Notes under the pieces: generated by a model
Databases searched by the model: none
Told to the model about the DNA's origin: nothing
The model's input: the letters and a program-made list of their open reading frames with translations, nothing else
In this document: in pieces, positions 17,273-43,700 of the stretch
How positions within the stretch are numbered: position 1 is the stretch's first letter
How the letters are laid out: each line of letters starts with the position of its first letter
Position numbers and translations under genes: made by a program
From: Mytilus californianus
Taxonomy: Eukaryota
Direction of reading: 5' to 3'
DNA length: 64,000 nucleotides
Assembly (NCBI RefSeq): GCF_021869535.1
Contig: NW_026262593.1
Location: forward strand, 14,508,001-14,572,000

Positions 17273-17925
17273 ACAGTATTCAAATGACCAACAGAAAAGA
17301 CAACTTATGGATTTTCAAAAATTTGCATTGATGTACGCGACCTTTTAGATGCATTCGAAAAAAACGTGCTACACCTTTTGTACCAAATTAATAGCTTTGA
17401 ATATTTAATGTATTAATTGGTTGATATATATTTTATGCATATTTATTAGTTATTTGTATATATATTTGACAATCCATAATGGTTTTATTTTGGTGTTTAG
17501 TTTTTATTGAAATTAAATTCAAACTGTAGTTTGTTGTTAGTTACAATTAAATTTAAACGTTGTAACTATTTTTTAGTCTAAAGATCTCTCGTAGTAGTAA
17601 ATTATGTATTTGTCAATGAAAACTACTATGTAACATAGGAGGAAACTCAATTCATTGTCATTTTTACTGACACATTAAAAATGCAATTAGATACCTTTAT
17701 TATTTATGAGAATAAAAATAAATACTTATAATATATTGAAATAAATACATGTAATTTATCACAATTTAAATAATAAAAAATAATAATATTGTTTTGCATT
17801 GACGCAGCAATATATTTTTTCCTTAACGCAGCATTTATTCTGGATCCTCCTCCTCCTCTATATCTCGTAATCTACAAGAAAGGAAATCATAATTGTATAA
17901 GACTATTTATTAGTAATATAATCAA

Positions 17926-18802: not shown

Positions 18803-19059
18803 TATAATCAAAGAGCAGTATAAGGGAAATATACATGCAGGATTTCAACATATTTATTTTATGAACTGAAAGGAATAGTAAAGTGCATGCATGTCTTGTG
18901 AGAAAGAGTATGCAATATATATAAAAAATAAAAAAAAAACTTTGTGTCGTATCACACAAATGAAGCTAATATGCAAAATAAGAGCTTTACATTGCTCTCA
19001 TGTTAAGTTGTACTTTGGTTTTCATTAAAAGTAATCACATTTGGCAATCCAATTAAGCC

Positions 19060-19300
19060 GTTGTCTTGGTTGCTGTTTGCGTTATTTGTTTCTCGGTTGC
19101 TTTAAGCATAAATCATGCTGTTGTTTTTCTCTTCTGAATTGTTTCACATGGCCATGCCGTGGCCTTTCATAGCTTACTATACGGTATGGGTATTGCTCAT
19201 TGCTGTAGGCCATATAGTACCCTACATTTGTTTACATCCTCGTCTTTTGGTCTCTGGTTGATAGTTGTCTCATTGGCAATCATATACAACATCACCTTAT
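19060..19300 (-). repeat. Interspersed repeat family A, degenerate copy
   Basis: Ends in ATAGTTGTCTCATTGGCAATCATA..ACATC, the reverse complement of the family A end. Confidence 0.7.
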
Positions 19301-19321
19301 TTTTATTTACTCAATTATATA

Positions 19322-22300
19322 TTATTTACATTGTAATCTGAAGATGCAAATATTGTCGTTAAAATCCGTTACATTTGTTTTAAAATGAATTATTCTGATT
19401 TTTTTTGTAAGTGAACTAACTTACTCAGTCTGACTAATATGCTCACAGTCTTTTCTCCATTGGTCCAGGGCTGCATGAATTGTATCTTGTACGTACTTCT
19501 CTATAAAAGCTTAAATGTAAGAAATGAAGTATGATAGATAAGGGAAAGATATAAAATTCTATGATGTTATGCCATTGAACAAACATCCAGTTTCTTGTGT
19601 TTATACAAAAGATGCAATATCTTAACACGAGGAAACGGATTTAACGTCCCTATTCTGGCCAGACGTGGTTACGTATCTATATAGTACGCAAACCCAAACG
19701 AATGTCCATCTTTATCAGTCCAAATGACCACATTTTTATCGCCAAGACAACAGTTGAGCTATACAAAATAAAAGATTGAGTAAATCATTTATATCAAGAA
19801 CTGAGATCCCGCAGATCTAACATCATTAGGCATAATTTCAGACGAAGTAAATGCTATTCGTGTTTTAGCCCTGCATAAATATCGTAATAGTAGTACAGGT
19901 GTGATTAAAGGGGTCTAAGGGAGCTACCATTTGATTTTTATGGGGGGGGGGGGGGGGCTAGGATGAAAAAATTTGTCCTGCATTTTTTTTTAGTTGTAAT
20001 CTCTGTCCTGCCTTTTTATTTTTCACTCTGTTCGGTCCTGCCTTTTTTTTTTAAAGTTTATCCTGACTTTTTTTTACCTAAATTGTCATCCTGACTTTTT
20101 TTTTTGCAAGTGTTTCATCCTGCCTTTTTTTTACTCAAAACTAGTGTCCTGCCTATTTTTTTCAAATTTCATCCTAGCCCACCCCATAAAAATCAAATGG
20201 TAGCTCCCAAACGATATGATTTCTAGATGCACACACAATTTTATGAAAATCCGAAATACCTATTACATATGCTTCGCCTTAAACTTATCACAAAATGTAA
20301 TGCAGTTAGTTTATAAAAACGATTTTAACTGCACAACGCTATGTTATTTGATGGAGTATATAATCCACGGTTTACCTGTCTGTAACTAAATGAAGCCACC
20401 ATTTTGAATTCCGGAATTTATTGGTATTTGATTTCTTCAATAAAAGATGAAATAATAAAAGAAAAAATAAAATAAAAAGAACTGAGCCTTTTTAGCTTTC
20501 CTGACCAAACACAAGATTCATCATTCTATAATTAACTTTCATTTGGCGTCCGTTAAATATTTTGCAAACAATAATTCTCCCGAACTAAATCTAACTTGCT
20601 AATGAAATTAAAACCTTTCCACAATTATCTAAAACGACTTGGTCCTGGAGTTCCCGCTTTACACCACCATGTCCGCTTTGTCTTTAAATGAAGTATAATG
20701 TATAAGGGTTTAATGGGAGTTGATGTCTTATCTCTTAGAACACCATAATAGACGCATGGAATTGTTGAATATGTGCTCAGAAAGTCAACATCTACCGCCA
20801 TTACATTTCTACCAAATTTATTACACACAGCGGAAACGGATTATTGGCTTATAATGATATTTGGTGTTGTTGTTGTTTTTTTTTTAATCTAAACGTTTTT
20901 TATCATCATCTTGAAACTATTAAAATAGATAAACAGGTGGAACTGCACACAGCAAGAATTATAAGCTATTACAGATCAAAAGATCAAAAGATACGTCAAT
21001 TTGAAGCGTATATCACTTATCTCCAAGATGATTCAATATTCCAAAGCCTGCGTTTCCTATTAAAATTTCTTTGTTAGAACTTTGCTGCTTACAATGGTTT
21101 TTTTTTGGTAAAGTGAAGTCATCGCTTCGAAATATTTACGAACGCCGTAACAATTTGGTTGACTGTTATGGAATATCTGTGTTACAAATGACGATGGAGT
21201 GTTCCAACTCTTTTCCTCTATAATGTCATCATCAAATGCGACATGTCACCGCATTTGTACTTGCCATGAACAACACGACGGGTTCCCACCTTCTTTCTTG
21301 AGGAACTTAGATCACCCCTAGTATATGTTGGAGTTCGTGTAGCTCGATTTTTAGGTTTCTGTATAGTTGTTTGAAGATTGTTGCTTGTCTTTTCGACATT
21401 TTAATTTTTGACCATGGTGTCTGTTTTTCTTCGTCTTATGATCACGAGTTTTGATTGTTCCCTTGGTACATTCTTCCCTATTGAATACACTTAACTAACA
21501 ATTAGTTTCTAATTCTAAGGCCTTTGCCTATTATCTTTGAAGTATAAAATGTAAAAGCAATAAAATAAAAGTCTACATAAACGCTTAACTCAATTGATCA
21601 ATTGACATTTTATAGCAGAATCATCTTTAAGACCAATTTTAACATTTGTGTTGATTATCTTGAAAACTTGAGTGTATCATAGATTGAAACTGTATAATAG
21701 CAGACTGATTGTTTAGCCAAGATATATAAATAAATCTGTGTCATTTGTTCACTTGAGGAGAGTTGTCTCATTGGCAATCATACCACATCTTCTTATTGTT
21801 ATATGTATGACCGAAACTATCCAGACCCGTACCGGGGGGTAGGGGGTGACATCGGCTCACGCCAAACAAAATCTCAACTTTAATACATGTAGACACAATT
21901 CAAACAGAACGTCGAATTTAATAGTGCTTATTTGTTTTCAAAAGGGCGTACGTACGAATCCCTCGAACCCCCTAGCTACGGGCCTGCTATCACTAAACTG
22001 TCTATTGGAATTATTGCCTTAACCATAGGATGATTTGACAAGTTTACAAATAATATGCTAGTCTGAATCTAACGTAAACGAATAATGCAATCATAGCACT
22101 GAAAATAGTGGTCATCGTTTTATTTGAGTGGACTCGAAGAATGTATACAATGTACTTACAAATAAATAATGTATAAAAGAAAAGAAATTTTTGATCGAAA
22201 ATCAGTGCAAATTAATATCCTTTTGCTTTTGAATTTGTTATTATACCTTCAACTGTTAAAATCTCTCCTTCTTCGTATTCCGATTCCGATGATGATCTAT

Positions 22301-25300
22301 CTGAAAACCGTTCATCTAGTAAGGCTGTTGTTGAAGAATTTTCTTCGGAAGCTTTTTCTTCACTAGCCTTCAGTCGGTCGTCGTATGAGAGCCCGTGATC
22401 GCTATTGTCGTCTGAACATGTTTCATCTAATGACTCCTGGTGTACAAATAGTGGCTCCACCTTGTTTACTTTTGCTGCAAATGTCTGGTGGCAAAAAAAA
22501 AAAGAAAGAATACAAACACAAAAATAAACATAAAAAAAAACCTGGCAGAATTGCTAAAAAAACCAAGTTTTATTTTTGAAAGAAAGAAAAAAAATAAAAA
22601 AATAAAAGCAATTTCGGATTTTTGAAATGCAATACAGTTTGTTTATTTATTTAGCTATTTTTATAAACTCTTGCACAATAAATGTTAACTTTTTAACTCC
22701 AGCGCTTCTGATGTAAAGTCTAGCTTTGTAGATATATTAAATTATTTAGCGCTGATGGTGTAAAAGTCCCGCGCTTGAGATATTAGTATAACGTCAAGCG
22801 CAGAAGATGTACAGTCTTAAGTTGTACTGAAGACATAGTCTTGCTCTATGGACGAAAAATCCAGTACTCGAGATGTAAAGTTCAGCGCTAAAGATATATA
22901 GTCCAGCGTTAGAGATGTAAACTCCAATGTTCGGGATTTAAATCCGAGCCTTTTAGATGTAATGCAGATTACAGGCAGTGACTCTACTAGTTCATAGAAA
23001 TTAATACAACCTTTCGGTAACTAACAATTGTTTCTCTATGGGCATTCGATTTTCCAAAAATAAGCCTGGAATTAAGTGGTTGTCGTTTTTTTTTTATGTT
23101 TCTCACATTTGTTTTTCGTTTATTGTTTTGCATATTTTGTTCATGTGTTGTGCCGTTACACCACTGTCCCAGGTTATGGGGAACTTCAAGGTTGGCGCCT
23201 TGAAACATGTTTAACCCCGCCACATTCTGTGTGTGCCTGTCCAAAGTCGGGAGCCTGTTGTTCATGTCTGTCATTTTTGTTTTTTCGCAAATTGTTTTCG
23301 TACAAATAAGGCCGTTTGTTTTCTCAATTAAATTGTTTCATATTTTTCATGTCGGGGCCTTTTATAGCCGACTATACGGTATAGGGTTTTCTCATTGTTG
23401 AAGGCCGTACGGTTGTCTATAATTTCTTACATCCACTTCATTTAAACTTTGGTGGATAGCTGTCTCATTGGCACTCATACCACATCTCCTTATTTTTATA
23501 TGCACGTCTCCAGCGATAGAGCTACTTCTTTAGCACTGGATTTTGACTTAAAAAAATCATAACTCTTATTCTGCATCATACCAACAGAGCTCCAGTTCTG
23601 ACAAAAATTTAGACGTTGACGATTAAAAAGTCATAAAGTCCTTAAGTTAATGTAATTATCCTTATTATTTACACTTACAACACGGCTCCTCTCTCGTCGA
23701 ACTTTTGGTTTCCTTTGGTTGATTGGATTCCATTGTCGTTTTCGTCTACAGCAAAAATACTGTCGCAACTAACAATAAAAAATCATTATTGTTATATAAT
23801 GAGCACAGCTGAAAACCGTAAGTACAAGCACTTCGGGTACATGCCAATTTTGCTTTGCCCTGTCCCATTTTTCCCAAATCCTTTATTTTTTTTCTTTTAA
23901 TTTTAAATTTTTTTGTGTTTTTTCTGTTTTAGACTCTCATAAATATTCTAGAAAACAACCCTAGTTATTTACTATTTACTATTAACTGATAGTTTACTAT
24001 CCACTGAGGTCACTGGTTTCTCTACATATTATCAGTGACAGCTGTGGATAGTAAACTAGTAATTGATAGTAAATAGTAAACACATGTTGAGTCTAGTATA
24101 TTTATGTAAGTCTAAAACAGAAATATACGAAAATAATTGAACTTTTAAAAAACGGATTTTGGAAAAGAGGGGAAAGGCACAAACAATTGTCCTGTCCCCA
24201 AGTACCTATGATACAAATTAAGTCAGTACTGTAAAGGATGTCCCTCGACAAAAATTACAAGCATGTCATATTTTTACGAAATTTCATTCAACAACATCTC
24301 CACTGGACGTTAAGCAACTAACAATCAATTAATCAACAACAATATTTCAAAATTAATAACATTACGACTTTATAAGTACATGCACAATTGTTGAAAAGTC
24401 TTTCAAGTATATCTCCAAACCTTTCAAAATTTGTATATATTCAAATTCTGAGGAATTGCATAACTTTTCTGTTTTGACTGTGCGAGTGAAACCAATACAG
24501 GGGAAATATCTAATTTAATAGATTTAAAAGAATTCGCGCTCAGGGAAGATTTAGGATGTTATACTGGCTCAGTCTAAAATATAGTTTTTTTTTTGTGTAA
24601 ATTAAGGTATTAATATATTAAATTTTATGCATCAAATTTACATTTGGAACAGTGAGAAACGTTACCATAAGCCATATTTCGGATATTTCTGGTCAATAGT
24701 GAAAAAAAAACCACATATGGATGGCTAATTTGTTTGACCGTGATCAGTTAGTCGTGCCATAAACAAAACCAATACCTCTAACCTAAATCCTGGTCAACCC
24801 ATTTTAAATAAGACATTTTGTAATGAATATTCATGTAAGATACATGCAGATTGGTTTATAGATTTAAAAAAAAAGAACAAAGAGATTAAAAATCGGTTAT
24901 CCGCATGTTATGAGAATTGGATATGTTGTCAGAGATTAAAAAAAATTGTTTTTTTTAATAAAAGGTCATGTTTTTCTCCGACTGTTATTGACGTCTTTAC
25001 ACTAAATCCACTGGATGTTCTGATTGTGTACTGATTGATACTTTAGTCTTAAATACATGATTTTTTATCAGTTGTTATTGGCTTTGAACTAGCTGTCAGT
25101 AACTGCGAGTACTATCCGATCTGTATTTAGGGTCTTTTTTGTTGTTGGGATGTATAAATACCCGGCCACGTCTGGTCTCCGTTTTTAAAACTTGCTTTTC
25201 TGCACTGTATCGATCTGTTAAGTTGAGACCTTTTCAACTGATTTTTATAGTTTTTCATATGTTGTGCTGTTACACCTTCCAAGGTAAGGGGGAAGGGTTT

Positions 25301-25792
25301 TGACGCCCACCTGCCACATTCTGTATGTGCCTGTAATTCAGTGGTTGTCGCTTGTTGCTGTATATCATATTTGTATTTCGTTCATTGTTTTGTACATAAA
25401 TCAGGCCGATAATTTTCTCGTTTGAATTGTTTTACAATTGTCATATCATGGCCTTTTATAACTGTCTATGCGGTATGGGTTTTGCTCATTGTTGAAGGCC
25501 GTACGGTGATCTATAGTTGTTTACTTCTGTGTCATTTGGTCTCTGCTGGAGACTTGTGTCTCATATCTCCTTTTTTTTATAGTTACACGGAATTTTAAAG
25601 TTTTATCGATATAAATTGTTTATTTGAAATACTAGCACAACTCATAGATGTTTATTGTTTAAAAAAAGGACAAATGCTAGTCTCTAAATAAAGACAAATG
25701 CTAGTTTCTAAGAAAATAGTAAAATTAAGTGATCAAATGATACTTACGAATAAACAAAAATTGTCCGGAAGCGGCTGCGATCTGACCTCCAT
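19322..25792 (-). CDS. Uncharacterised 154-aa protein, 5 coding exons; putative membrane-tethered PP1/PKA scaffold (AKAP-like)
   Basis: Exons (minus) 25792-25748, 23768-23679, 22484-22247, 19500-19425, 19337-19322. Donors GTAAGT, GTAAGT, GTATAA, GTAAGT; pyrimidine-rich AG acceptors; phases 0,0,1,2 give an open frame of 465 nt. AATAAA lies about 15 nt after the stop. Protein: MEVRSQPLPDNFCLFLRQYFCCRRKRQWNPINQRKPKVRRERSRVTFAAKVNKVEPLFVHQESLDETCSDDNSDHGLSYDDRLKASEEKASEENSSTTALLDERFSDRSSSESEYEEGEILTVEEKYVQDTIHAALDQWRKDCEHISQTELQCK. The function is inferred from short motifs only. Confidence 0.62.
19919..20208. mobile_element. PIF/Harbinger (Tourist-like) MITE, second copy
   Basis: Same TIR and internal subrepeats as 6074-6352. 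Left flank TAA, right flank AAA (one mismatch). Confidence 0.85.
21150..21475 (+). repeat. Degenerate Penelope-like 3' end plus tail fragment
   Basis: GTTGACTGTTATGGAATATCTGT resembles GTTGACCGTTATGGTATATCCGT at 42625, followed by AACAACACGACGGGT...GATTGTTCCCTTGGTA. Confidence 0.6.
21740..21810 (-). repeat. Interspersed repeat family A end fragment
   Basis: GAGAGTTGTCTCATTGGCAATCATACCACATCTTCTT. Confidence 0.75.
21822..21986. mobile_element. MITE with CAGGCCCGTAGC-type TIRs and 5-bp TSD
   Basis: Left CAGACCCGTACC, right GCTACGGGCCTG. CTATC lies on both sides (21817-21821, 21987-21991). Confidence 0.8.
22695..22945. repeat. Degenerate minisatellite of about 21 bp (consensus near GTCCAGCGCTAGAGATGTAAA)
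   Basis: Roughly 11-12 diverged units visible by eye. Confidence 0.7.
23085..23500 (-). repeat. Interspersed repeat family A copy
   Basis: Contains ACACCACTGTCCCAGG, AACATGTTTAACCCCGCC and the GTCTCATTGGCACTCATACCACATCT end. Confidence 0.88.
23836..24206. mobile_element. Foldback/palindromic MITE-like element, about 370 bp
   Basis: The arms are reverse complements around a loop of about 18 nt near 24025, e.g. TTTACTATTTACTAT..TAGTTTACTATCCAC versus GTGGATAGTAAACTA..ATAGTAAATAGTAAA, and TTCTGTTTTAGACT versus AGTCTAAAACAGAA. Ends are GGTAC...GTACC. No clear TSD. Confidence 0.75.
24962..25580 (-). repeat. Interspersed repeat family A, near full-length copy
   Basis: Reverse complement of 48365-48940 over most of its length. 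Confidence 0.88.
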
Positions 25793-30501: not shown

Positions 30502-32262
30502 TTATCGATACACAATTTTATACATTGCGGCAAATTTTCCGTTCCGATTGCTTACCAGTAGAACGGAGTTTTCTTTGTCAATATAAATAGCTTGAGGACG
30601 TTCTAGTCCAACACTTTTCCCAAGTAGTATCCGAATTTTATTTCTATCAGGAGAAATAACTACAATGCAATGATTATCACTGCACGCGACGAAAATATTA
30701 CCATATTTGTCCGTTGTTACGGTCTGAGGCCCTCTCATGTACTCATTTTGGTACGTCCACATCAACGTACCCGTTACAGAAACGCAATACAACAAATGTT
30801 TCTTAGGGTCTGTGTAGTAAATGCTGTCTGAACCGATGTGGAAGTTTTCTAGCCTCGACTTGATAGTTGTACTCTTGATCCTGTTTCCAAAGTAATCTAA
30901 TTCCAGTAGCTCGTTGCCTTTCATGCCAACAAAAATAGCATAGTCATCACTACAAAGTCCCCATCCCGACTTTTGTAATGGAATCGTGTCTATAATATCC
31001 CCATTCATACAGTTAATAAGTTTCACTTCATTTTGGTCGGGATATGTGACAGCGATGGTTGTTCCATCTAACTGAGTTACGTCCCATGGATCGCCAGTTA
31101 TTTTTATTTCTTTTAGATATTTCCCTAAAGCGTTGAATAAATAGAGATGACCATTTTTGTAGGACGACTCGGCCACCATTATTTTTTTGTCGATTAACCT
31201 AATAATACTAGAAATTATACCAAGTTGTCCAACAGGAATTGATATTTTCCTATGAAAAAGTAGTGAGATTTTCCTTACATCAATTTCGTGTCGAATTGCT
31301 TCAGGGATTTGAGTTAGTGATGTTTTACCGCTTTTTAAAGTAATTTCTCTTGATGATCTTGGTGTTGTAAGAGATCTAGATCGAACCACTGGATGTAAAG
31401 CAGATTTATGCGCAGTCACTACATTTATTTTACCGAACGATGTAATTTTACTCATGATGAGTTTGACACTGGGGGAAGTTTCAAAAGAAATATCCACATC
31501 TACGGTCGTATCACTCGTTTGCAAGTACTGCAAGTAACTTTTGCTTGATTCCAGCTGGGATTCTGTATGTCTAATGCCATTGAATGCTTGTATATCAGTG
31601 GCATGCAATTTTATGCCCTTCAGATCTTTTTGTAGTGAAACCAAATTATCGCGCCTCTCGTTTACTTCTCGAAGAACAGCATCAATCTTTGAGTTCTCGA
31701 GAGATTCAATTACTTGTAAATCGTTTGATATTTTGTCCTCCAGTTTGTCTAAATGTTCGTTAAACTGTGTTCTTAATGTCAATATTTCACTTTTAATTCG
31801 TGCTTCTTCCTCTGTGATTCTATTCAAATTATTAGACCGACTTCTTGCCACCTTTTCTAAGTCTCCTAGCACACCTTCGATATCTCTATCAAGTTCATGA
31901 AAGGCAGACGACGACTTGACTGAAGCAGCCACACTTTCTAACGGCGTCACATCGATACATTTATGATGGTCAGTAAGGACACACTGCATACAACATTGGA
32001 CCTTATGAGATGGGCAATATAGTTCTAATTTCCGTTTGTGCTCGGTACAGTCGGGGTTGATCGTGTGAATGAAAGATGGAAGTTTTTCATACTGATTGGC
32101 GTCTATTGTTGTATGACCACGTGACATTTTCATCCGTTTGTGGTGGTCAACACAATCATCACAAAGTCCTTCTTCACACTCTAAGCACCATCTAGTTGAT
32201 TTAGACTTTTTACGACTTATTGAGCATGGACCACAGAAAAGCTCCATGTTTTCAGTTGCCAT
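30502..32262 (-). CDS. RING-less TRIM-like protein: B-box1, B-box2, coiled coil, C-terminal NHL-like beta-propeller; 586 aa, single coding exon
   Basis: B-box1 CGPC...WCLECEEGLCDDCVDHH...H; B-box2 CTEH...YCPSHKVQCCMQCVLTDHHKC; heptad-rich middle region; NHL-like repeats (GPQTVTTDKYGNIFVA, RPQAIYID). A splice acceptor TTTTATCTTATTTGACAG at 32294 places the likely start at MATENMELFC (32262) rather than at the ORF-track start 32331. Confidence 0.93.
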   Translation of the reverse strand: MATENMELFCGPCSISRKKSKSTRWCLECEEGLCDDCVDHHKRMKMSRGHTTIDANQYEKLPSFIHTINPDCTEHKRKLELYCPSHKVQCCMQCVLTDHHKCIDVTPLESVAASVKSSSAFHELDRDIEGVLGDLEKVARSRSNNLNRITEEEARIKSEILTLRTQFNEHLDKLEDKISNDLQVIESLENSKIDAVLREVNERRDNLVSLQKDLKGIKLHATDIQAFNGIRHTESQLESSKSYLQYLQTSDTTVDVDISFETSPSVKLIMSKITSFGKINVVTAHKSALHPVVRSRSLTTPRSSREITLKSGKTSLTQIPEAIRHEIDVRKISLLFHRKISIPVGQLGIISSIIRLIDKKIMVAESSYKNGHLYLFNALGKYLKEIKITGDPWDVTQLDGTTIAVTYPDQNEVKLINCMNGDIIDTIPLQKSGWGLCSDDYAIFVGMKGNELLELDYFGNRIKSTTIKSRLENFHIGSDSIYYTDPKKHLLYCVSVTGTLMWTYQNEYMRGPQTVTTDKYGNIFVACSDNHCIVVISPDRNKIRILLGKSVGLERPQAIYIDKENSVLLVSNRNGKFAAMYKIVYR

Positions 32263-32839
32263 GTTGATGGGAACATCTACCTTATTTGGAACTCTGTCAA
32301 ATAAGATAAAAATATTGATATTCATAATCAAACCAATTAAGAAAGTTACAGTCTTGTCGGCACAGTTCGTTTGATTTCTTTAAGTCATAAAAATGATATT
32401 CTTAAATCAGATTTTAAAAATACATAGTTTATTTTTGCAGTCTATATTGTATATGTATTATACGAGCTCTGACATTTAATTTCAGAATTTTTGCTTAAGT
32501 AATCACAAAGTCGTCCATTATGTCTAATGATCAAAATATTAGCAAGCTAAATAATTGGTAACTGTTTGACCATTGGGCAGCAACTTGTCAGATACTCTGT
32601 TCGTAATTCTAATAACATCATTTTAATAGTTTGGTCAAGTATCAATTTTAGATGAAAATAGTTGTAAAAATTAGAAAAAATAAGATAAAACAGAACTTTT
32701 GCGGCCAAAAATTTATTGAAAAGCAGCATTTCAGTTGAATCATTAAATGACTACTTTTGCATCCTTTCAGATTTAAAAAAAGAAGAAATCGCTAATTGAC
32801 AATGTAAAAGAAATCTTAAATATGACTGTCTTCGCTTAC

Positions 32840-40765: not shown

Positions 40766-43700
40766 TTATACTAGAAACACATCAGTCATTATGTTGGATC
40801 TATTTCCGAATAACGATTTTGGAAAAGGATCATATCCAAATAATTTGAAGTCATTATGATACACATTCTGCAACTTGTACATTAAAGTAAGAGGAATAGT
40901 GTTATACGCTTGTATAAAAAGTTTCCGTCTTTGTACTGAAAGATTGTCCTTTTTGGATATTTGGTGTGTGGTCGAAATAATAGTTAGTAATTTTGATAAC
41001 AATATGTGTTGCGATTCTTTCTTATTTAAGGGGATAGATTTATTCTCAGAAATTATCCCCCTATACTGTAGCTTCCTCCAAATTCGTTGCAAACCAGTAT
41101 ACGGATTCATGCATTTTTTAGACTCGTGTCGAAAAGCAATAAAAGCTTGAACTGTATCATAAATGGCATCATATTTATACTCATCGCTAAAATTTTGTGT
41201 AATGTAAGGGCTTGAGTTTATTTGAAATTTAGCAAAAATATTGACTGTATCATTTAGAAAATTTTCCATTTTGCCAATATAATGATAATTGACTTGACAT
41301 GGTCTACAGATGGAATGGATGGGTATAAAATGATCGTCTAATTTTTCTATTGGGGTTTGAATGATGTATTCCACAAGGTCTCTGAAAGTAACAGCACTAC
41401 CACACGAGGGGTTTTTACCAACTGTTTTCATAATTATGACACCTAGTGTTTTCCAAAAATACGGATTAGGTGAATATAATTTATCAATGTACGCTGACAA
41501 AATTCGTGAATAAGGATTTCTAGTGAACATGAAACTTCTGGTTTCTGTTAATATGTTATACGTTCCATTCAAACTATGCTTTGCACACGAAACACGATAT
41601 TTGCTCTGTTCATCCTGTGGTTTTATACGAAATGGGGATAATTTAATGTTTCTTTGTAAATAGGCGAGAAGGCGCTTCCAAAATGTTGATCCTCCCTTAT
41701 AAACTCTACAATAAGCAAGTTGCTTGCTGAATAGAGGCATTATACTGTTCTTAAAAACGGCATCCATTTTAGTTTCATTAAGACTTTCTGCATCGCAAAG
41801 ATCTTTTGGGAAATGGTAACCATCTTTCCAAGACCTCTTTGTAATATCTGTCTAAAAAGAAAATGAAAATAGTCTTTGATCGTTTTCTTTCAATCGATTT
41901 ATGACTTTTGAACAGCAGTATACCACTGTTGCCTTTATTTGAGAGCGTTGTCGAATACTAGTATAATATTATTACCAAATTGAATATTATAATGACTAGA
42001 AGGACTATTTTGCCATACAAATATTTTTTTTATATAAAAAACCTTATTTTGCTTTTTGTTTTCCCCGTTTTGAGTAATAAGCATGTTTCGGAATCTATCA
42101 TACAGTGTGGTGAAATATATACTTATCAGTCAATCAAGCATTTCATTATCATATAAATGTATTACAATGTGAAGTTAGCAGTATCCTTTAACTTTTTTTT
42201 TTACTTTCCGCTATATAGATGATGTTCTTTCACTAAATAATTCAAAATTTGGTGACTATGTTGAACGCATCTATCCCATTGAACTTAAGATAAAGGATAC
42301 AACAGATACAGTTAAGTCTGCCTCATATCTTGACTTACATCTAGAAATTGACAATGAGGGTCGGTTGAAATAAAAACTTTACAACAAAATAGATGATTTC
42401 AGCTTCCCAATTGTGAACTTTCCATTTCTATGTAGCAACATTCCAGTAGCGCCTGCATACGGAGTATATATCTCCCCGTTGATACGATATTCCAGGGCTT
42501 GTATTTCCTATCATGATTTCCTCGATAGAGGGTTGCTGCTCACAAGGAAGCTATTACACCAAGAGTTCCAAGTGGTGAAGTTGAAATCATCCCTTCGTAA
42601 GTTTTACGGACACCATCACGAGTTGGTTGACCGTTATGGTATATCCGTTTCACGAATGATAGCGGATATGTTCCTAATGTCGTCACTACGATCCCGCTCC
42701 GTTCCCTCTTTCCGAATGTGACCTACCGAATTAGACTTATTACCGGGTTTGTACTAACATAAGTAACACGACGAGTGCCACATGTGAAGCAGGATCTGCT
42801 TACCCTTCGGGAGCACCTGATATCTCCACCAGTTTTTGGAGTGGTTCGTGTTGCTCAGTCTTTAGTTGTCTATGCTTTGTTTTGTGTACTATTGTTTATT
42901 TGTCGGTCTTTTTCTTTTTTAGCCATGACGTTGTCAGTTTATTTTCGCCTTATGAGTTTGAATGTCCCTCTGGTATCTTTCGCCTCTCTTTTATCGTAGG
43001 ACATGTAGAAAAAACCGTCCGTTCGGAAAAAAATCTTAACTTAAGTAGTTTTAAGCATATCAGCCGTGACTAACTGGGTGGGGGTGCATTAATTGTCAAT
43101 ATATATATTTTAATTCATACTTCATTAGTGCTCATTCAATCAAAATCAGACGATTACAGCAAATTTACTATGTTCAGTTATGTGCTCCTCACCTCTGTTG
43201 TATGATGTTGATAATTCAATACGAGATAGGAGTCGTGTTTGGTGAATTTAGAATGATTGTGATACCACGTTAAATACTCCTTCACACCTTGTTCACCTAA
43301 AAAAGATTAAAAAACATATGTTATAGGCCAAGTTAAGAAAGCAAATTGTGTGACAAGTGGTAAAGTTCTTTGAAAATTTGAATTTTCCATTAAATTAGAA
43401 CAATGCATATTTTAAGAAACAATGCAAAAAATGTTTTTATTTTAATATTCTACTGTATGCAAATTGCCGTTTTCATGCTGAACTGATACCTGGCAAACAA
43501 ATTTAAATTTCATCACGATACCATAAAGTAGTAAATGAGTCTGAGATATGAATCAAGTGTTCGTTTTACTTGAAATAAAAGCCCCTTATTAGCATAACCC
43601 TGCCTCTGCCTATTATGTCAAATTCTATTGCTGTTACGGGCAAATGTTCTCTCGATTTACAAAATTACGAGTGTAGCAATCTCGACTTACACCAATAAAT

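What the first reader, a model, noticed from the sequence alone, without database searches (positions are those of the whole stretch)
19322..25792. Hidden 154-aa gene resembling a lipid-anchored dual PP1/PKA scaffold
Seen: five short exons with consensus splice sites join into one open frame, of which the ORF track shows only a fragment. The product has FCLFLRQYFCCRRKR near the N-terminus, RSRVTF formed across the exon 2/3 junction, an acidic Ser-rich linker, and VEEKYVQDTIHAALDQW near the C-terminus. Known: Cys-Cys next to basic residues is a common palmitoylation context, RVxF is the PP1 docking motif, and PKA-R-binding AKAP helices look like AKAP7 LSKRLVENAVLKAVQQY (recalled), which lines up register for register with this segment. 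Inference: an undescribed small membrane scaffold bringing together a kinase and a phosphatase. I recognise no family for it.
Basis: partly seen in the sequence, partly recalled or inferred. Interest (0 to 1): 0.8.

Follow-up and report, generated by a model that had tools for sequence, protein, structure and literature searches.

The report
Small conserved bivalve adaptor-like gene

Summary
The exon 4 acceptor lies 9 nt upstream, at 19509, which adds Ala-Phe-Ile. The last exon is at 17871-17835 (LRDIEEEEDPE*), not 19337-19322.

The corrected 164-aa product is identical to RefSeq XP_052081809.1, "uncharacterized protein LOC127719628", of Mytilus californianus, so it is not hidden from public annotation.

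Support for a real gene:
- A 606-nt contig in run X1 joins exons 2, 3 and 4 exactly, and a second study covers the exon 2/3 junction.
- dN/dS against M. galloprovincialis is 0.11.
- Scallop orthologues have the same five-exon layout.

An exhaustive search of 1.84 billion representatives found only mussel and scallop relatives. Pfam, PDB and the literature gave nothing.

Conservation falls on three blocks:
- YFCCRRKRQWNPIN.
- V-x-F-A-x-KVNKV-x-P.
- A C-terminal helix (pLDDT 84-93) whose hydrophobic face matches the published AKAP register. It has an aromatic at position 1, as in type-I anchors.

The basic residue of RVxF is lost in scallops, and similarity to smAKAP is limited to mussels. The best reading is a probably S-acylated, AKAP-like adaptor, with PP1 docking less certain. 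This is inferred from sequence and no binding was tested.

The parts
25748..25792 (-). Exon 1, coding part: ATG at 25792-25790, residues 1-15 (MEVRSQPLPDNFCLF), GTAAGT donor
   Evidence: One search gives the borders. One search shows an in-frame TAA four codons upstream, A at -3 and G at +4. It equals the N-terminus of RefSeq P0012. The X1 contig runs 83 nt beyond exon 2's acceptor, which is long enough for these 45 nt plus 5'UTR.
23679..23768 (-). Exon 2, residues 16-45: LRQYFCCRRKRQWNPINQRKPKVRRERSRV. It holds the Cys-Cys/polybasic block (Y19-N32 = 23718-23759) and the R-V of RVTF (23679-23684).
   Evidence: The X1 contig piece is exactly 23679-23768. The block is invariant between mussel and scallop: C21 C22 R23 R24 K25 R26 Q27 W28 N29 P30 I31 N32. 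It is also present in an unidentified mytilid contig, L001/L007.
22247..22484 (-). Exon 3, residues 46-124 plus 1 nt. It starts with TF of RVTF and the conserved FAAKVNKVEPL block (22449-22484), followed by the acidic Ser-rich linker with NSSTTALLDERFS.
   Evidence: The X1 contig piece is exactly 22247-22484 and abuts 23679. The X5 contig also crosses this junction (record 21, and the row for place 23738). AlphaFold2 pLDDT is below 50 over residues 38-77.
19425..19509 (-). Exon 4, with the true acceptor at 19509, residues 125-153: AFIEKYVQDTIHAALDQWRKDCEHISQT(E). The AKAP-register helix core F126-R143 is at 19454-19507.
   Evidence: The X1 contig piece is 19425-19509 and abuts 22247. RefSeq models of two species use the same acceptor. 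AlphaFold2 gives a helix at 123-157, with mean pLDDT 84 and 93 for blocks 121-130 and 131-140.
17835..17871 (-). Exon 5, coding part, residues 153 (last nt) to 164: LRDIEEEEDPE, stop TAA at 17837-17835.
   Evidence: Found by a motif scan of the minus strand. The acceptor is TTTCCTTTCTTGTAG. It matches the C-termini of P0003, P0004 and P0012.
19322..19337 (-).
   Evidence: It is absent from RefSeq P0012 and from all orthologues. No piece of the X1 contig was listed there, although 19000-19424 was in the laid stretch.

Best explanation
This is a real five-exon gene, LOC127719628 of Mytilus californianus, encoding a 164-aa, mostly disordered protein confined to mussels and scallops as far as the searches can see. 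That part is shown, and I put about 0.97 on it.

The mechanism below is inferred from sequence only.
- Membrane anchor. The N-terminal hydrophobic stretch followed by an invariant Cys-Cys and a polybasic run (FCLFLRQYFCCRRKRQW) would hold the protein on the cytoplasmic face of a membrane through S-acylation plus charge. GAP-43 and AKAP18-alpha do this with their N-termini.
- Kinase docking. The conserved C-terminal amphipathic helix (F126-R143) would dock with its hydrophobic face into the groove of a dimeric docking/dimerisation (D/D) domain. The most likely partner is a PKA regulatory subunit. Another protein with an RIIa-type D/D domain is the alternative. That would make the protein a small membrane AKAP, analogous to smAKAP and AKAP18-alpha but not homologous to them.
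- Phosphatase docking. The disordered, invariant V-x-F-A-x-KVNKV-x-P block between the two is a second docking site. In mussels it reads as an RVxF-type PP1 motif (RVTF). This third step is the least certain.

The confidence given is for the anchor-plus-AKAP reading. All three functions together I put at about 0.2.
For: Gene reality:
- An X1 contig removes introns 2 and 3 exactly, and a second study (X5) covers the exon 2/3 junction.
- The corrected model is identical to RefSeq XP_052081809.1.
- Against M. galloprovincialis there are 30 synonymous and 15 non-synonymous differences, dN/dS 0.106.
- The scallop orthologue has the same five exons, with the V|xF codons split by the same intron.

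Anchor:
- The CC plus RRK.RQWNPIN block is invariant between mussel and scallop and present in a third mytilid.
- AlphaFold2 gives a helix at residues 10-26, pLDDT about 67.

Helix:
- pLDDT is 84-93.
- Positions 2,5,6,9,10,13,14,17 are I,Y,V,T,I,A,L,W in mussel and V,F,V,T,I,A,T,L in scallop, with F/Y at position 1. The polar face varies.
- That register is the one PMC12083921 gives for AKAP helices, with F/Y at position 1 as the type-I mark.
- The register occurs in about 2% of shuffles, and in 0.2% when F/Y at position 1 is also required.
- The solved smAKAP peptide 5hvz_C aligns without gaps at exactly this place: score 31 for the 18-mer, reached by 4 of 2000 shuffles.

PP1:
- RVTF is the core of the validated NIPP1 docking peptide (preprint 10.64898/2026.09.09.750541).
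- It lies in a segment with pLDDT below 50.
- V45 and F47 are invariant.
Against: - Nothing was bound to anything. Every functional step is read from motifs.
- The smAKAP and AKAP7 peptides do not align above chance with the scallop protein, and AKAP7 does not with the mussel protein either.
- Position 2 is Ile/Val, where type-I anchors have a nearly invariant Ala.
- Thr sits at position 9, so the register holds only if Thr is counted as acceptable. With a strict hydrophobic set it fails.
- The stricter RII pattern I recall (Hundsrucker 2010) is not met.
- The loose RVxF pattern turns up in 18% of shuffles. The mussel motif misses the two stricter recalled patterns, and scallops (THVHF) miss even the loose one.
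- The invariant block around V-x-F is much longer than a PP1 motif needs.
- The two basic clusters also fit a classical bipartite nuclear import signal.
- The raw RNA run X9 showed no reads on the exons, so expression is low or tissue-restricted.
Confidence: 0.38

Rival explanations
1. A lineage-restricted, disordered protein whose conserved blocks serve partners other than PKA and PP1. The helix could be a self-association, membrane-binding or other docking helix. The long V-x-F-A-x-KVNKV-x-P block would bind an unknown partner. The resemblance to AKAP and RVxF motifs would then be what short degenerate patterns give by chance.
For: - The RVxF loose pattern is expected in 18% of shuffles and is absent in scallops.
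- AKAP7 similarity is not significant, and smAKAP similarity is absent in scallops.
- The invariant blocks (QWNPIN, KVNKV) go beyond any known PP1, AKAP or acylation motif.
- No family or annotation gives a lead.
Against: - The hydrophobic face keeps the exact 4-residue paired register in two lineages while the polar face drifts.
- Aromatic at position 1, and A13, L14 and W17 identical to smAKAP in mussels.
- Three independent motif-like features fall in the order and spacing expected for an anchored adaptor, and exactly on the conserved blocks.
Confidence: 0.3
2. A small nuclear or nucleolar protein, perhaps a NIPP1-like PP1 regulator. The two basic clusters (RRKR, then 10 residues, then KVRRER) would act as a bipartite nuclear import signal rather than as a membrane patch.
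For: - Both mussel (RRKR-X10-KVRRE) and scallop (RK-X10-KNSKR) sequences fit the classical bipartite pattern (K/R)(K/R)-X10-12-(3 of 5 K/R). The pattern is from my own knowledge.
- RVTF is the NIPP1 core.
- The linker and tail are acidic.
Against: - The spacer QWNPIN is invariant, which import-signal spacers are not.
- The invariant Cys-Cys preceded by a hydrophobic stretch has no role in import.
- This reading gives no role to the conserved amphipathic helix.
Confidence: 0.15
3. A true orthologue of vertebrate smAKAP (C2orf88), diverged beyond ordinary recognition.
For: - An ungapped match of the helix to 5hvz_C: 6 identities in 24, score 26-31, reached by 0.2-0.6% of shuffles.
- Both are small, lipid-anchor-type proteins with the helix near the C-terminus.
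Against: - No match to any Pfam family, including the smAKAP family, at E<=10.
- phmmer against PDB does not find 5hvz_C.
- The similarity vanishes in scallops.
- The N-terminus is MEV..., not Met-Gly-Cys.
- smAKAP is traced only to the base of vertebrates (PMC12083921).
Confidence: 0.04
4. Not a gene: a chance open frame through consensus-like splice sites.
For: The exons are short and the genome is AT-rich. One RNA run (X9) has no reads on them.
Against: Spliced contigs in two studies, dN/dS 0.106, RefSeq models in two species, and scallop orthologues with the same exon layout.
Confidence: 0.01

Closest known systems
smAKAP (C2orf88), the small membrane A-kinase anchor protein of vertebrates; helix solved with the RI-alpha D/D domain (PDB 5HVZ)
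   Same: - Small size, a lipid-type N-terminal anchor and one anchoring helix near the C-terminus.
- The helix aligns without gaps: aromatic at position 1, and Q7, D8, A13, L14, Q16 and W17 identical in Mytilus.
   Different: - No detectable homology outside the helix, and no Pfam hit.
- The anchor would be an internal Cys-Cys plus polybasic run, not N-terminal Met-Gly-Cys myristoyl/palmitoyl.
- Ile/Val instead of Ala at position 2.
- The similarity is not kept in scallops.
- smAKAP has no V-x-F block that I know of (own knowledge).
AKAP18-alpha (AKAP7 alpha/beta), an 81-aa lipid-anchored RII anchor (PDB 4ZP3)
   Same: - Architecture: a short acylated N-terminus followed by one amphipathic helix.
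- The same hydrophobic register.
   Different: - The alignment score is not above chance.
- AKAP18-alpha is myristoylated on Gly2 and palmitoylated on Cys5/Cys6 (own knowledge).
- It reaches PP1 only indirectly, through inhibitor-1 (own knowledge).
AKAP220 (AKAP11), AKAP149 (AKAP1) and Yotiao: AKAPs that also bind PP1
   Same: The proposed logic: one polypeptide carries both a PKA-R docking helix and an RVxF-type PP1 site, bringing kinase and phosphatase together (own knowledge).
   Different: Those are large multidomain proteins with no sequence relation to this one. Here the whole protein is 164 aa, and the PP1 motif is degenerate in scallops.
NIPP1 (PPP1R8) RVTF docking segment
   Same: The identical R-V-T-F core, in a disordered and basic N-terminal context (one search gives the peptide AKNKRVTFSEDDEII).
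   Different: NIPP1 has an acidic stretch and a hydrophobic pair after the motif. Here the motif is followed by AAKVNKVEP. There is no FHA domain and no homology.
GAP-43-type N-terminal S-acylation motif (hydrophobic residues, Cys-Cys, basic run)
   Same: YFCCRRKRQ resembles the Leu-Cys-Cys-Met-Arg-Arg-Thr-Lys context of GAP-43. This is recalled from memory and was not checked with a tool.
   Different: Here the Cys-Cys sits at residues 21-22, behind a 20-residue leader, not at residues 3-4.

Membership tests
A-kinase anchoring proteins (a functional class) | A 14-18-residue amphipathic helix with hydrophobic side chains at positions 2,5,6,9,10,13,14,17 (PMC12083921) | tested here: met
   Mussel F126-R143 and scallop Y91-I108 both fit, if Thr at position 9 (and at position 14 in scallop) is accepted. 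AlphaFold2 models a helix with pLDDT 84-93. With a strict hydrophobic set that excludes Thr the pattern is not met.
A-kinase anchoring proteins (a functional class) | Binds the D/D dimer of a PKA regulatory subunit, and binding is lost on helix disruption | not testable with these tools
   Only single chains can be folded here. An overlay, a pull-down or a complex prediction is needed.
A-kinase anchoring proteins (a functional class) | A targeting determinant that fixes the complex at a subcellular site | tested here: inconclusive
   The Cys-Cys/polybasic block is invariant and could be an acylation and membrane patch. It also fits a bipartite nuclear import pattern. No localisation data exist.
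Type-I (RI-selective) AKAPs | F/Y at position 1 and a nearly invariant Ala at position 2 of the helix (PMC12083921) | tested here: not met
   Position 1 is F in mussel and Y or F in scallop, so that half is met. Position 2 is Ile/Val, not Ala.
smAKAP family (C2orf88; Pfam SmAKAP) | Sequence match to the family profile | tested here: not met
   hmmscan of P0003 and of its C-terminal part against Pfam-A at E<=10 returned only a non-significant DUF4820 hit. phmmer against PDB did not return 5hvz_C.
smAKAP family (C2orf88; Pfam SmAKAP) | N-terminal Met-Gly-Cys dual acylation site | tested here: not met
   The protein starts MEVRSQ, and scallops start MDRWIH.
PP1-interacting proteins of the RVxF type | [RK]-x(0,1)-[VI]-{P}-[FW] in a disordered segment | tested here: inconclusive
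   Met in Mytilus (RVTF at 44-47, pLDDT below 50) and in the L001 mytilid (KSVTF). Not met in four scallop species (THVHF). The stricter recalled consensus patterns are not met in Mytilus. The chance rate of the loose pattern is 18%.
PP1-interacting proteins of the RVxF type | Binds the PP1 catalytic subunit through the motif | not testable with these tools
   This needs a pull-down with a V45A/F47A control, or a complex model.
S-acylated peripheral membrane proteins | Cysteines next to hydrophobic and basic residues, with no transmembrane segment | tested here: met
   FCLFLRQYFCCRRKR: the hydrophobic run is interrupted by Arg-Gln and is too short for a membrane span. The Cys-Cys is invariant in all species that show exon 2.
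S-acylated peripheral membrane proteins | Thioester-linked acyl groups on those cysteines | not testable with these tools
   Acyl-RAC or acyl-biotin exchange is needed.

The most novel reading that the evidence does not exclude
Pteriomorph bivalves evolved their own 130-165-aa, S-acylated membrane AKAP, independently of vertebrate smAKAP and AKAP18-alpha. Its helix carries the aromatic position-1 mark that the literature places at the origin of vertebrate type-I anchors. The same short chain also docks PP1, making it a minimal kinase/phosphatase signalling island in an invertebrate.
Probability: 0.18. Interest if true: 0.65.

Novelty: new member of a known kind. Interest (0 to 1): 0.42.

Why it matters
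If the helix does anchor PKA, this would be a minimal lipid-tethered AKAP outside vertebrates that arose by convergence. It would bear on the recent claim that isotype-selective anchoring determinants, such as an aromatic at helix position 1, appeared with vertebrates (PMC12083921). A 164-aa chain that carries an anchor, a phosphatase site and a kinase site would also be a convenient minimal model of a signalling island. cAMP/PKA signalling in bivalves controls catch muscle, ciliary beat and spawning, so it would point to where PKA is held in those cells.

If the helix does not anchor PKA, the result is more modest. It is a well-supported, taxon-restricted gene whose RefSeq entry lacks any functional note, plus corrections to one public model: the M. 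coruscus N-terminus is mis-framed.

Tried and rejected
- Pfam scans of the separate exons and of the full orthologue found no family.
- phmmer of the helix and of the whole protein against PDB found nothing, and did not find the smAKAP or AKAP7 peptides.
- ESM Atlas: no usable hit for the mussel proteins. For the scallop protein the third hit was AKAP14, at 0.76. That is below the level shuffled proteins often reach, so I treat it as no evidence.
- The word search with a profile of mussel and scallop sequences added only one more mytilid exon-3 fragment.
- The scan of metagenome contigs with the RQWNPIN and V[HT]FA[KA]KVN patterns gave 158 pattern matches, none confirmed.
- A literature search for the four LOC names and two accessions found no papers.
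- I looked for exon 2, exon 4 and exon 5 equivalents on the short contigs L001, L003, L006 and L007. Only exons 2 and 3 are there, so helix conservation in those lineages is unknown.
- The spliced californianus protein was never typed in. RefSeq P0012 and P0003 were used as references instead.
Full report
**1. What is in the sequence**

All features lie on the minus strand. They carry AG acceptors and GT donors and join into a 154-aa frame ending LQCK*. The mechanical ORF list shows only an 82-aa fragment of exon 3. The frame therefore exists as described.

**2. Which junctions are used**

Only one call of laid reads was allowed, limited to 6 kb, so 19000-24999 was laid.

- A 606-nt contig of run X1 (depth 8.6) consists of pieces 23768-23679, 22484-22247 and 19509-19425, which abut one another in the record. 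Introns 2 and 3 are removed exactly.
- The RV|TF junction is confirmed.
The extra 9 nt are in frame and add Ala-Phe-Ile.
- A contig of a second study (X5, depth 5.0) covers 22344-22484. By the row for place 23738, it also covers the last 69 nt of exon 2.
- The X1 contig stops matching at exactly 23768 and 19425, with 83 and 110 further letters.
- X1 is labelled only "RNA?". Exact removal of two introns is what shows it to be cDNA.
- The one run on record as raw RNA reads (X9, about 6% of it read) had zero depth on the exons. Expression is therefore low or tissue-restricted there.
- The high depths inside the introns are dispersed repeats.

**3. The true last exon**

The word search with the exon-3 ORF returned Mytilus proteins ending LQDIDEEDDPE or LRDIEEEEDPA. 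A scan of the minus strand found LRDIEEEEDPE* at 17871-17835, behind TTTCCTTTCTTGTAG.

The revised five-exon model gives 164 aa. It is letter for letter the RefSeq protein XP_052081809.1, [quoted passage not shown] (P0012). The gene is therefore already in public annotation, without a name or function. An earlier scan note had named the genome as California mussel, and this confirms it.

**4. Is it a constrained gene?**

- The M. galloprovincialis locus (L004) gives a collinear CDS that translates exactly to P0003.
- Against the window there are 30 synonymous and 15 non-synonymous differences: dS 0.37, dN 0.040, dN/dS 0.106.
- In M. coruscus exon 2 is intact in the right frame. The deposited model P0004 simply mis-frames it.
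- An in-frame stop lies four codons upstream of the ATG, which has A at -3 and G at +4.

**5. Relatives**

- phmmer of P0003 against 1.84 billion cluster representatives gave five hits in all: Mytilus models, exon-3 fragments from a hydrothermal-vent metagenome and another assembly, and a 127-aa scallop protein.
- The cluster of that scallop protein holds RefSeq "uncharacterized" proteins of Mizuhopecten, Pecten, Ylistrum and Argopecten.
- A profile word search added one more mytilid fragment.
- In the Mizuhopecten locus the protein maps to five exons with the same breaks, including V|HF at the exon 2/3 junction.
- An unidentified mytilid contig (L001) has exon 2 as FRHYFCCRRKRQWNPINAKKPRVKREKSV and exon 3 starting TFASKVNKVEP.
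- There is no Pfam family, no PDB sequence match, no usable Atlas hit, no confirmed metagenome locus and no paper naming the genes.

**6. Where the conservation lies**

Mussel and scallop proteins are about 40% identical. The invariant columns cluster as follows.

- C21 to N32 (CCRRK.RQWNPIN), plus R34, K35, R39 and E41.
- V45, F47, A48, K50 to V54, P56 and L57.
- In the helix, E128, V131, T134 and A138.

The acidic Ser-rich linker, including the mytilid-wide NSSTTALLDERFS, is missing from scallops.

AlphaFold2 with this shallow alignment gives mean pLDDT 57.5. It shows a helix at 10-26 (about 67), residues 38-77 below 50, and a helix at 123-157 whose blocks 121-130 and 131-140 average 84 and 93.

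**7. The helix as an AKAP helix**

PMC12083921 states that the hydrophobic face of AKAP helices is positions 2,5,6,9,10,13,14,17. It adds that type-I anchors have F/Y at position 1 and a nearly invariant Ala at position 2, with hydrophobic residues favoured at 17 and 18.

| Helix, numbered from position 1 | Sequence |
|---|---|
| Mussel (F126 = 1) | F I E K Y V Q D T I H A A L D Q W R |
| Scallop | Y V E N F V D Q T I Q R A T V T L I |

- Every face position is hydrophobic or Thr in both lineages, and position 1 is aromatic in both. The polar positions differ.
- In shuffles of the same proteins the register appears in 2-4%, and with F/Y at position 1 in 0.2%.
- Both place best, without gaps, at residue 126 of the mussel protein.
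- smAKAP scores 31, reached by 4 of 2000 shuffles. AKAP7 scores 16, reached by about 10% of shuffles.
- Neither peptide scores above chance on the scallop protein.

I read this as a shared docking-type register, not common descent with smAKAP. Three points count against an AKAP helix:

- Ile/Val rather than Ala at position 2.
- Thr at position 9.
- Failure of the stricter RII pattern that I recall.

**8. The V-x-F block**

- RVTF matches the loose consensus and is the core of the NIPP1 docking peptide. It sits in the disordered part.
- The L001 mytilid has KSVTF, which fits even the stricter recalled patterns.
- The four scallops have THVHF, which fits none of them.
- The loose pattern occurs in 18% of shuffles of the mussel protein.
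- What is invariant is V.FA.KVNKV.P(L), which is longer than a PP1 motif.

PP1 docking is possible but is the weakest leg.

**9. The N-terminal block**

A hydrophobic stretch is followed by an invariant Cys-Cys and then a polybasic run. There is no span long enough to cross a membrane. This is the usual context of S-acylated peripheral proteins. The same basic clusters fit a bipartite nuclear import pattern, but the invariant QWNPIN spacer and the Cys-Cys are not explained by import.

**10. Verdict**

The gene and three of the five exons are right, one acceptor is 9 nt off, and the last exon is wrong.
The three features are the conserved parts, and the helix fits the AKAP register in two lineages. 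PP1 docking is doubtful, and nothing has been shown to bind.
- The protein is a taxon-restricted, uncharacterised family. If it is an AKAP, it is a new, convergent member of a known kind.

Noticed in passing
L004:9330-9460 (M. galloprovincialis, intron 4): About 480 nt downstream of exon 4, its 3' half (TIHAALDQWRKDCGYDSQT plus the GTAAGT donor) is repeated at least twice in tandem. No such copies exist in the californianus window. They could act as decoy or alternative donors.
   Followed up: partly
P0002 (M. galloprovincialis, older annotation) versus window 23679-23768: One public model skips the 90-nt, in-frame exon 2 (MEVRTQPLPDNICIF|TFAAK...). If it is a real isoform, it would lose the Cys-Cys/polybasic block and the Arg-Val of RVTF together. 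No read evidence was available.
   Followed up: no
L005:3096-3185 (M. coruscus): The deposited protein P0004 has a spurious N-terminus because exon 2 was read in the wrong frame. In the right frame exon 2 is intact and 99% identical to the window.
   Followed up: yes
window 23738: G>T on the + strand in contigs of X1, X5 and X2. On the coding strand this is CGA>AGA at Arg26, which is synonymous. It is probably a polymorphism or a fixed difference from the reference individual.
   Followed up: partly
window 19900-20200, 21735-21800, 23100-23500, 24300-24340: Intronic dispersed repeats, including the 'ctcattggcaa' type element ends. They draw thousands of reads and contigs at 90-95% identity with loose ends in all four runs. 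These are high-copy elements, and some are transcribed somewhere in the genome.
   Followed up: no
window 30505-32331 (-) and 40769-41767 (-): Neighbouring single-ORF genes. One is a 609-aa B-box plus NHL-repeat (TRIM-like) protein. The other is a 333-aa Sulfotransfer_2 protein, E 2e-34.
   Followed up: partly
window 23680-23872, run X2 (another species label): A 205-nt contig runs from exon 2 straight into intron 1 (record 13). It is either unspliced RNA or DNA in a run guessed to be RNA. It shows that the sister species keeps exon 2.
   Followed up: no
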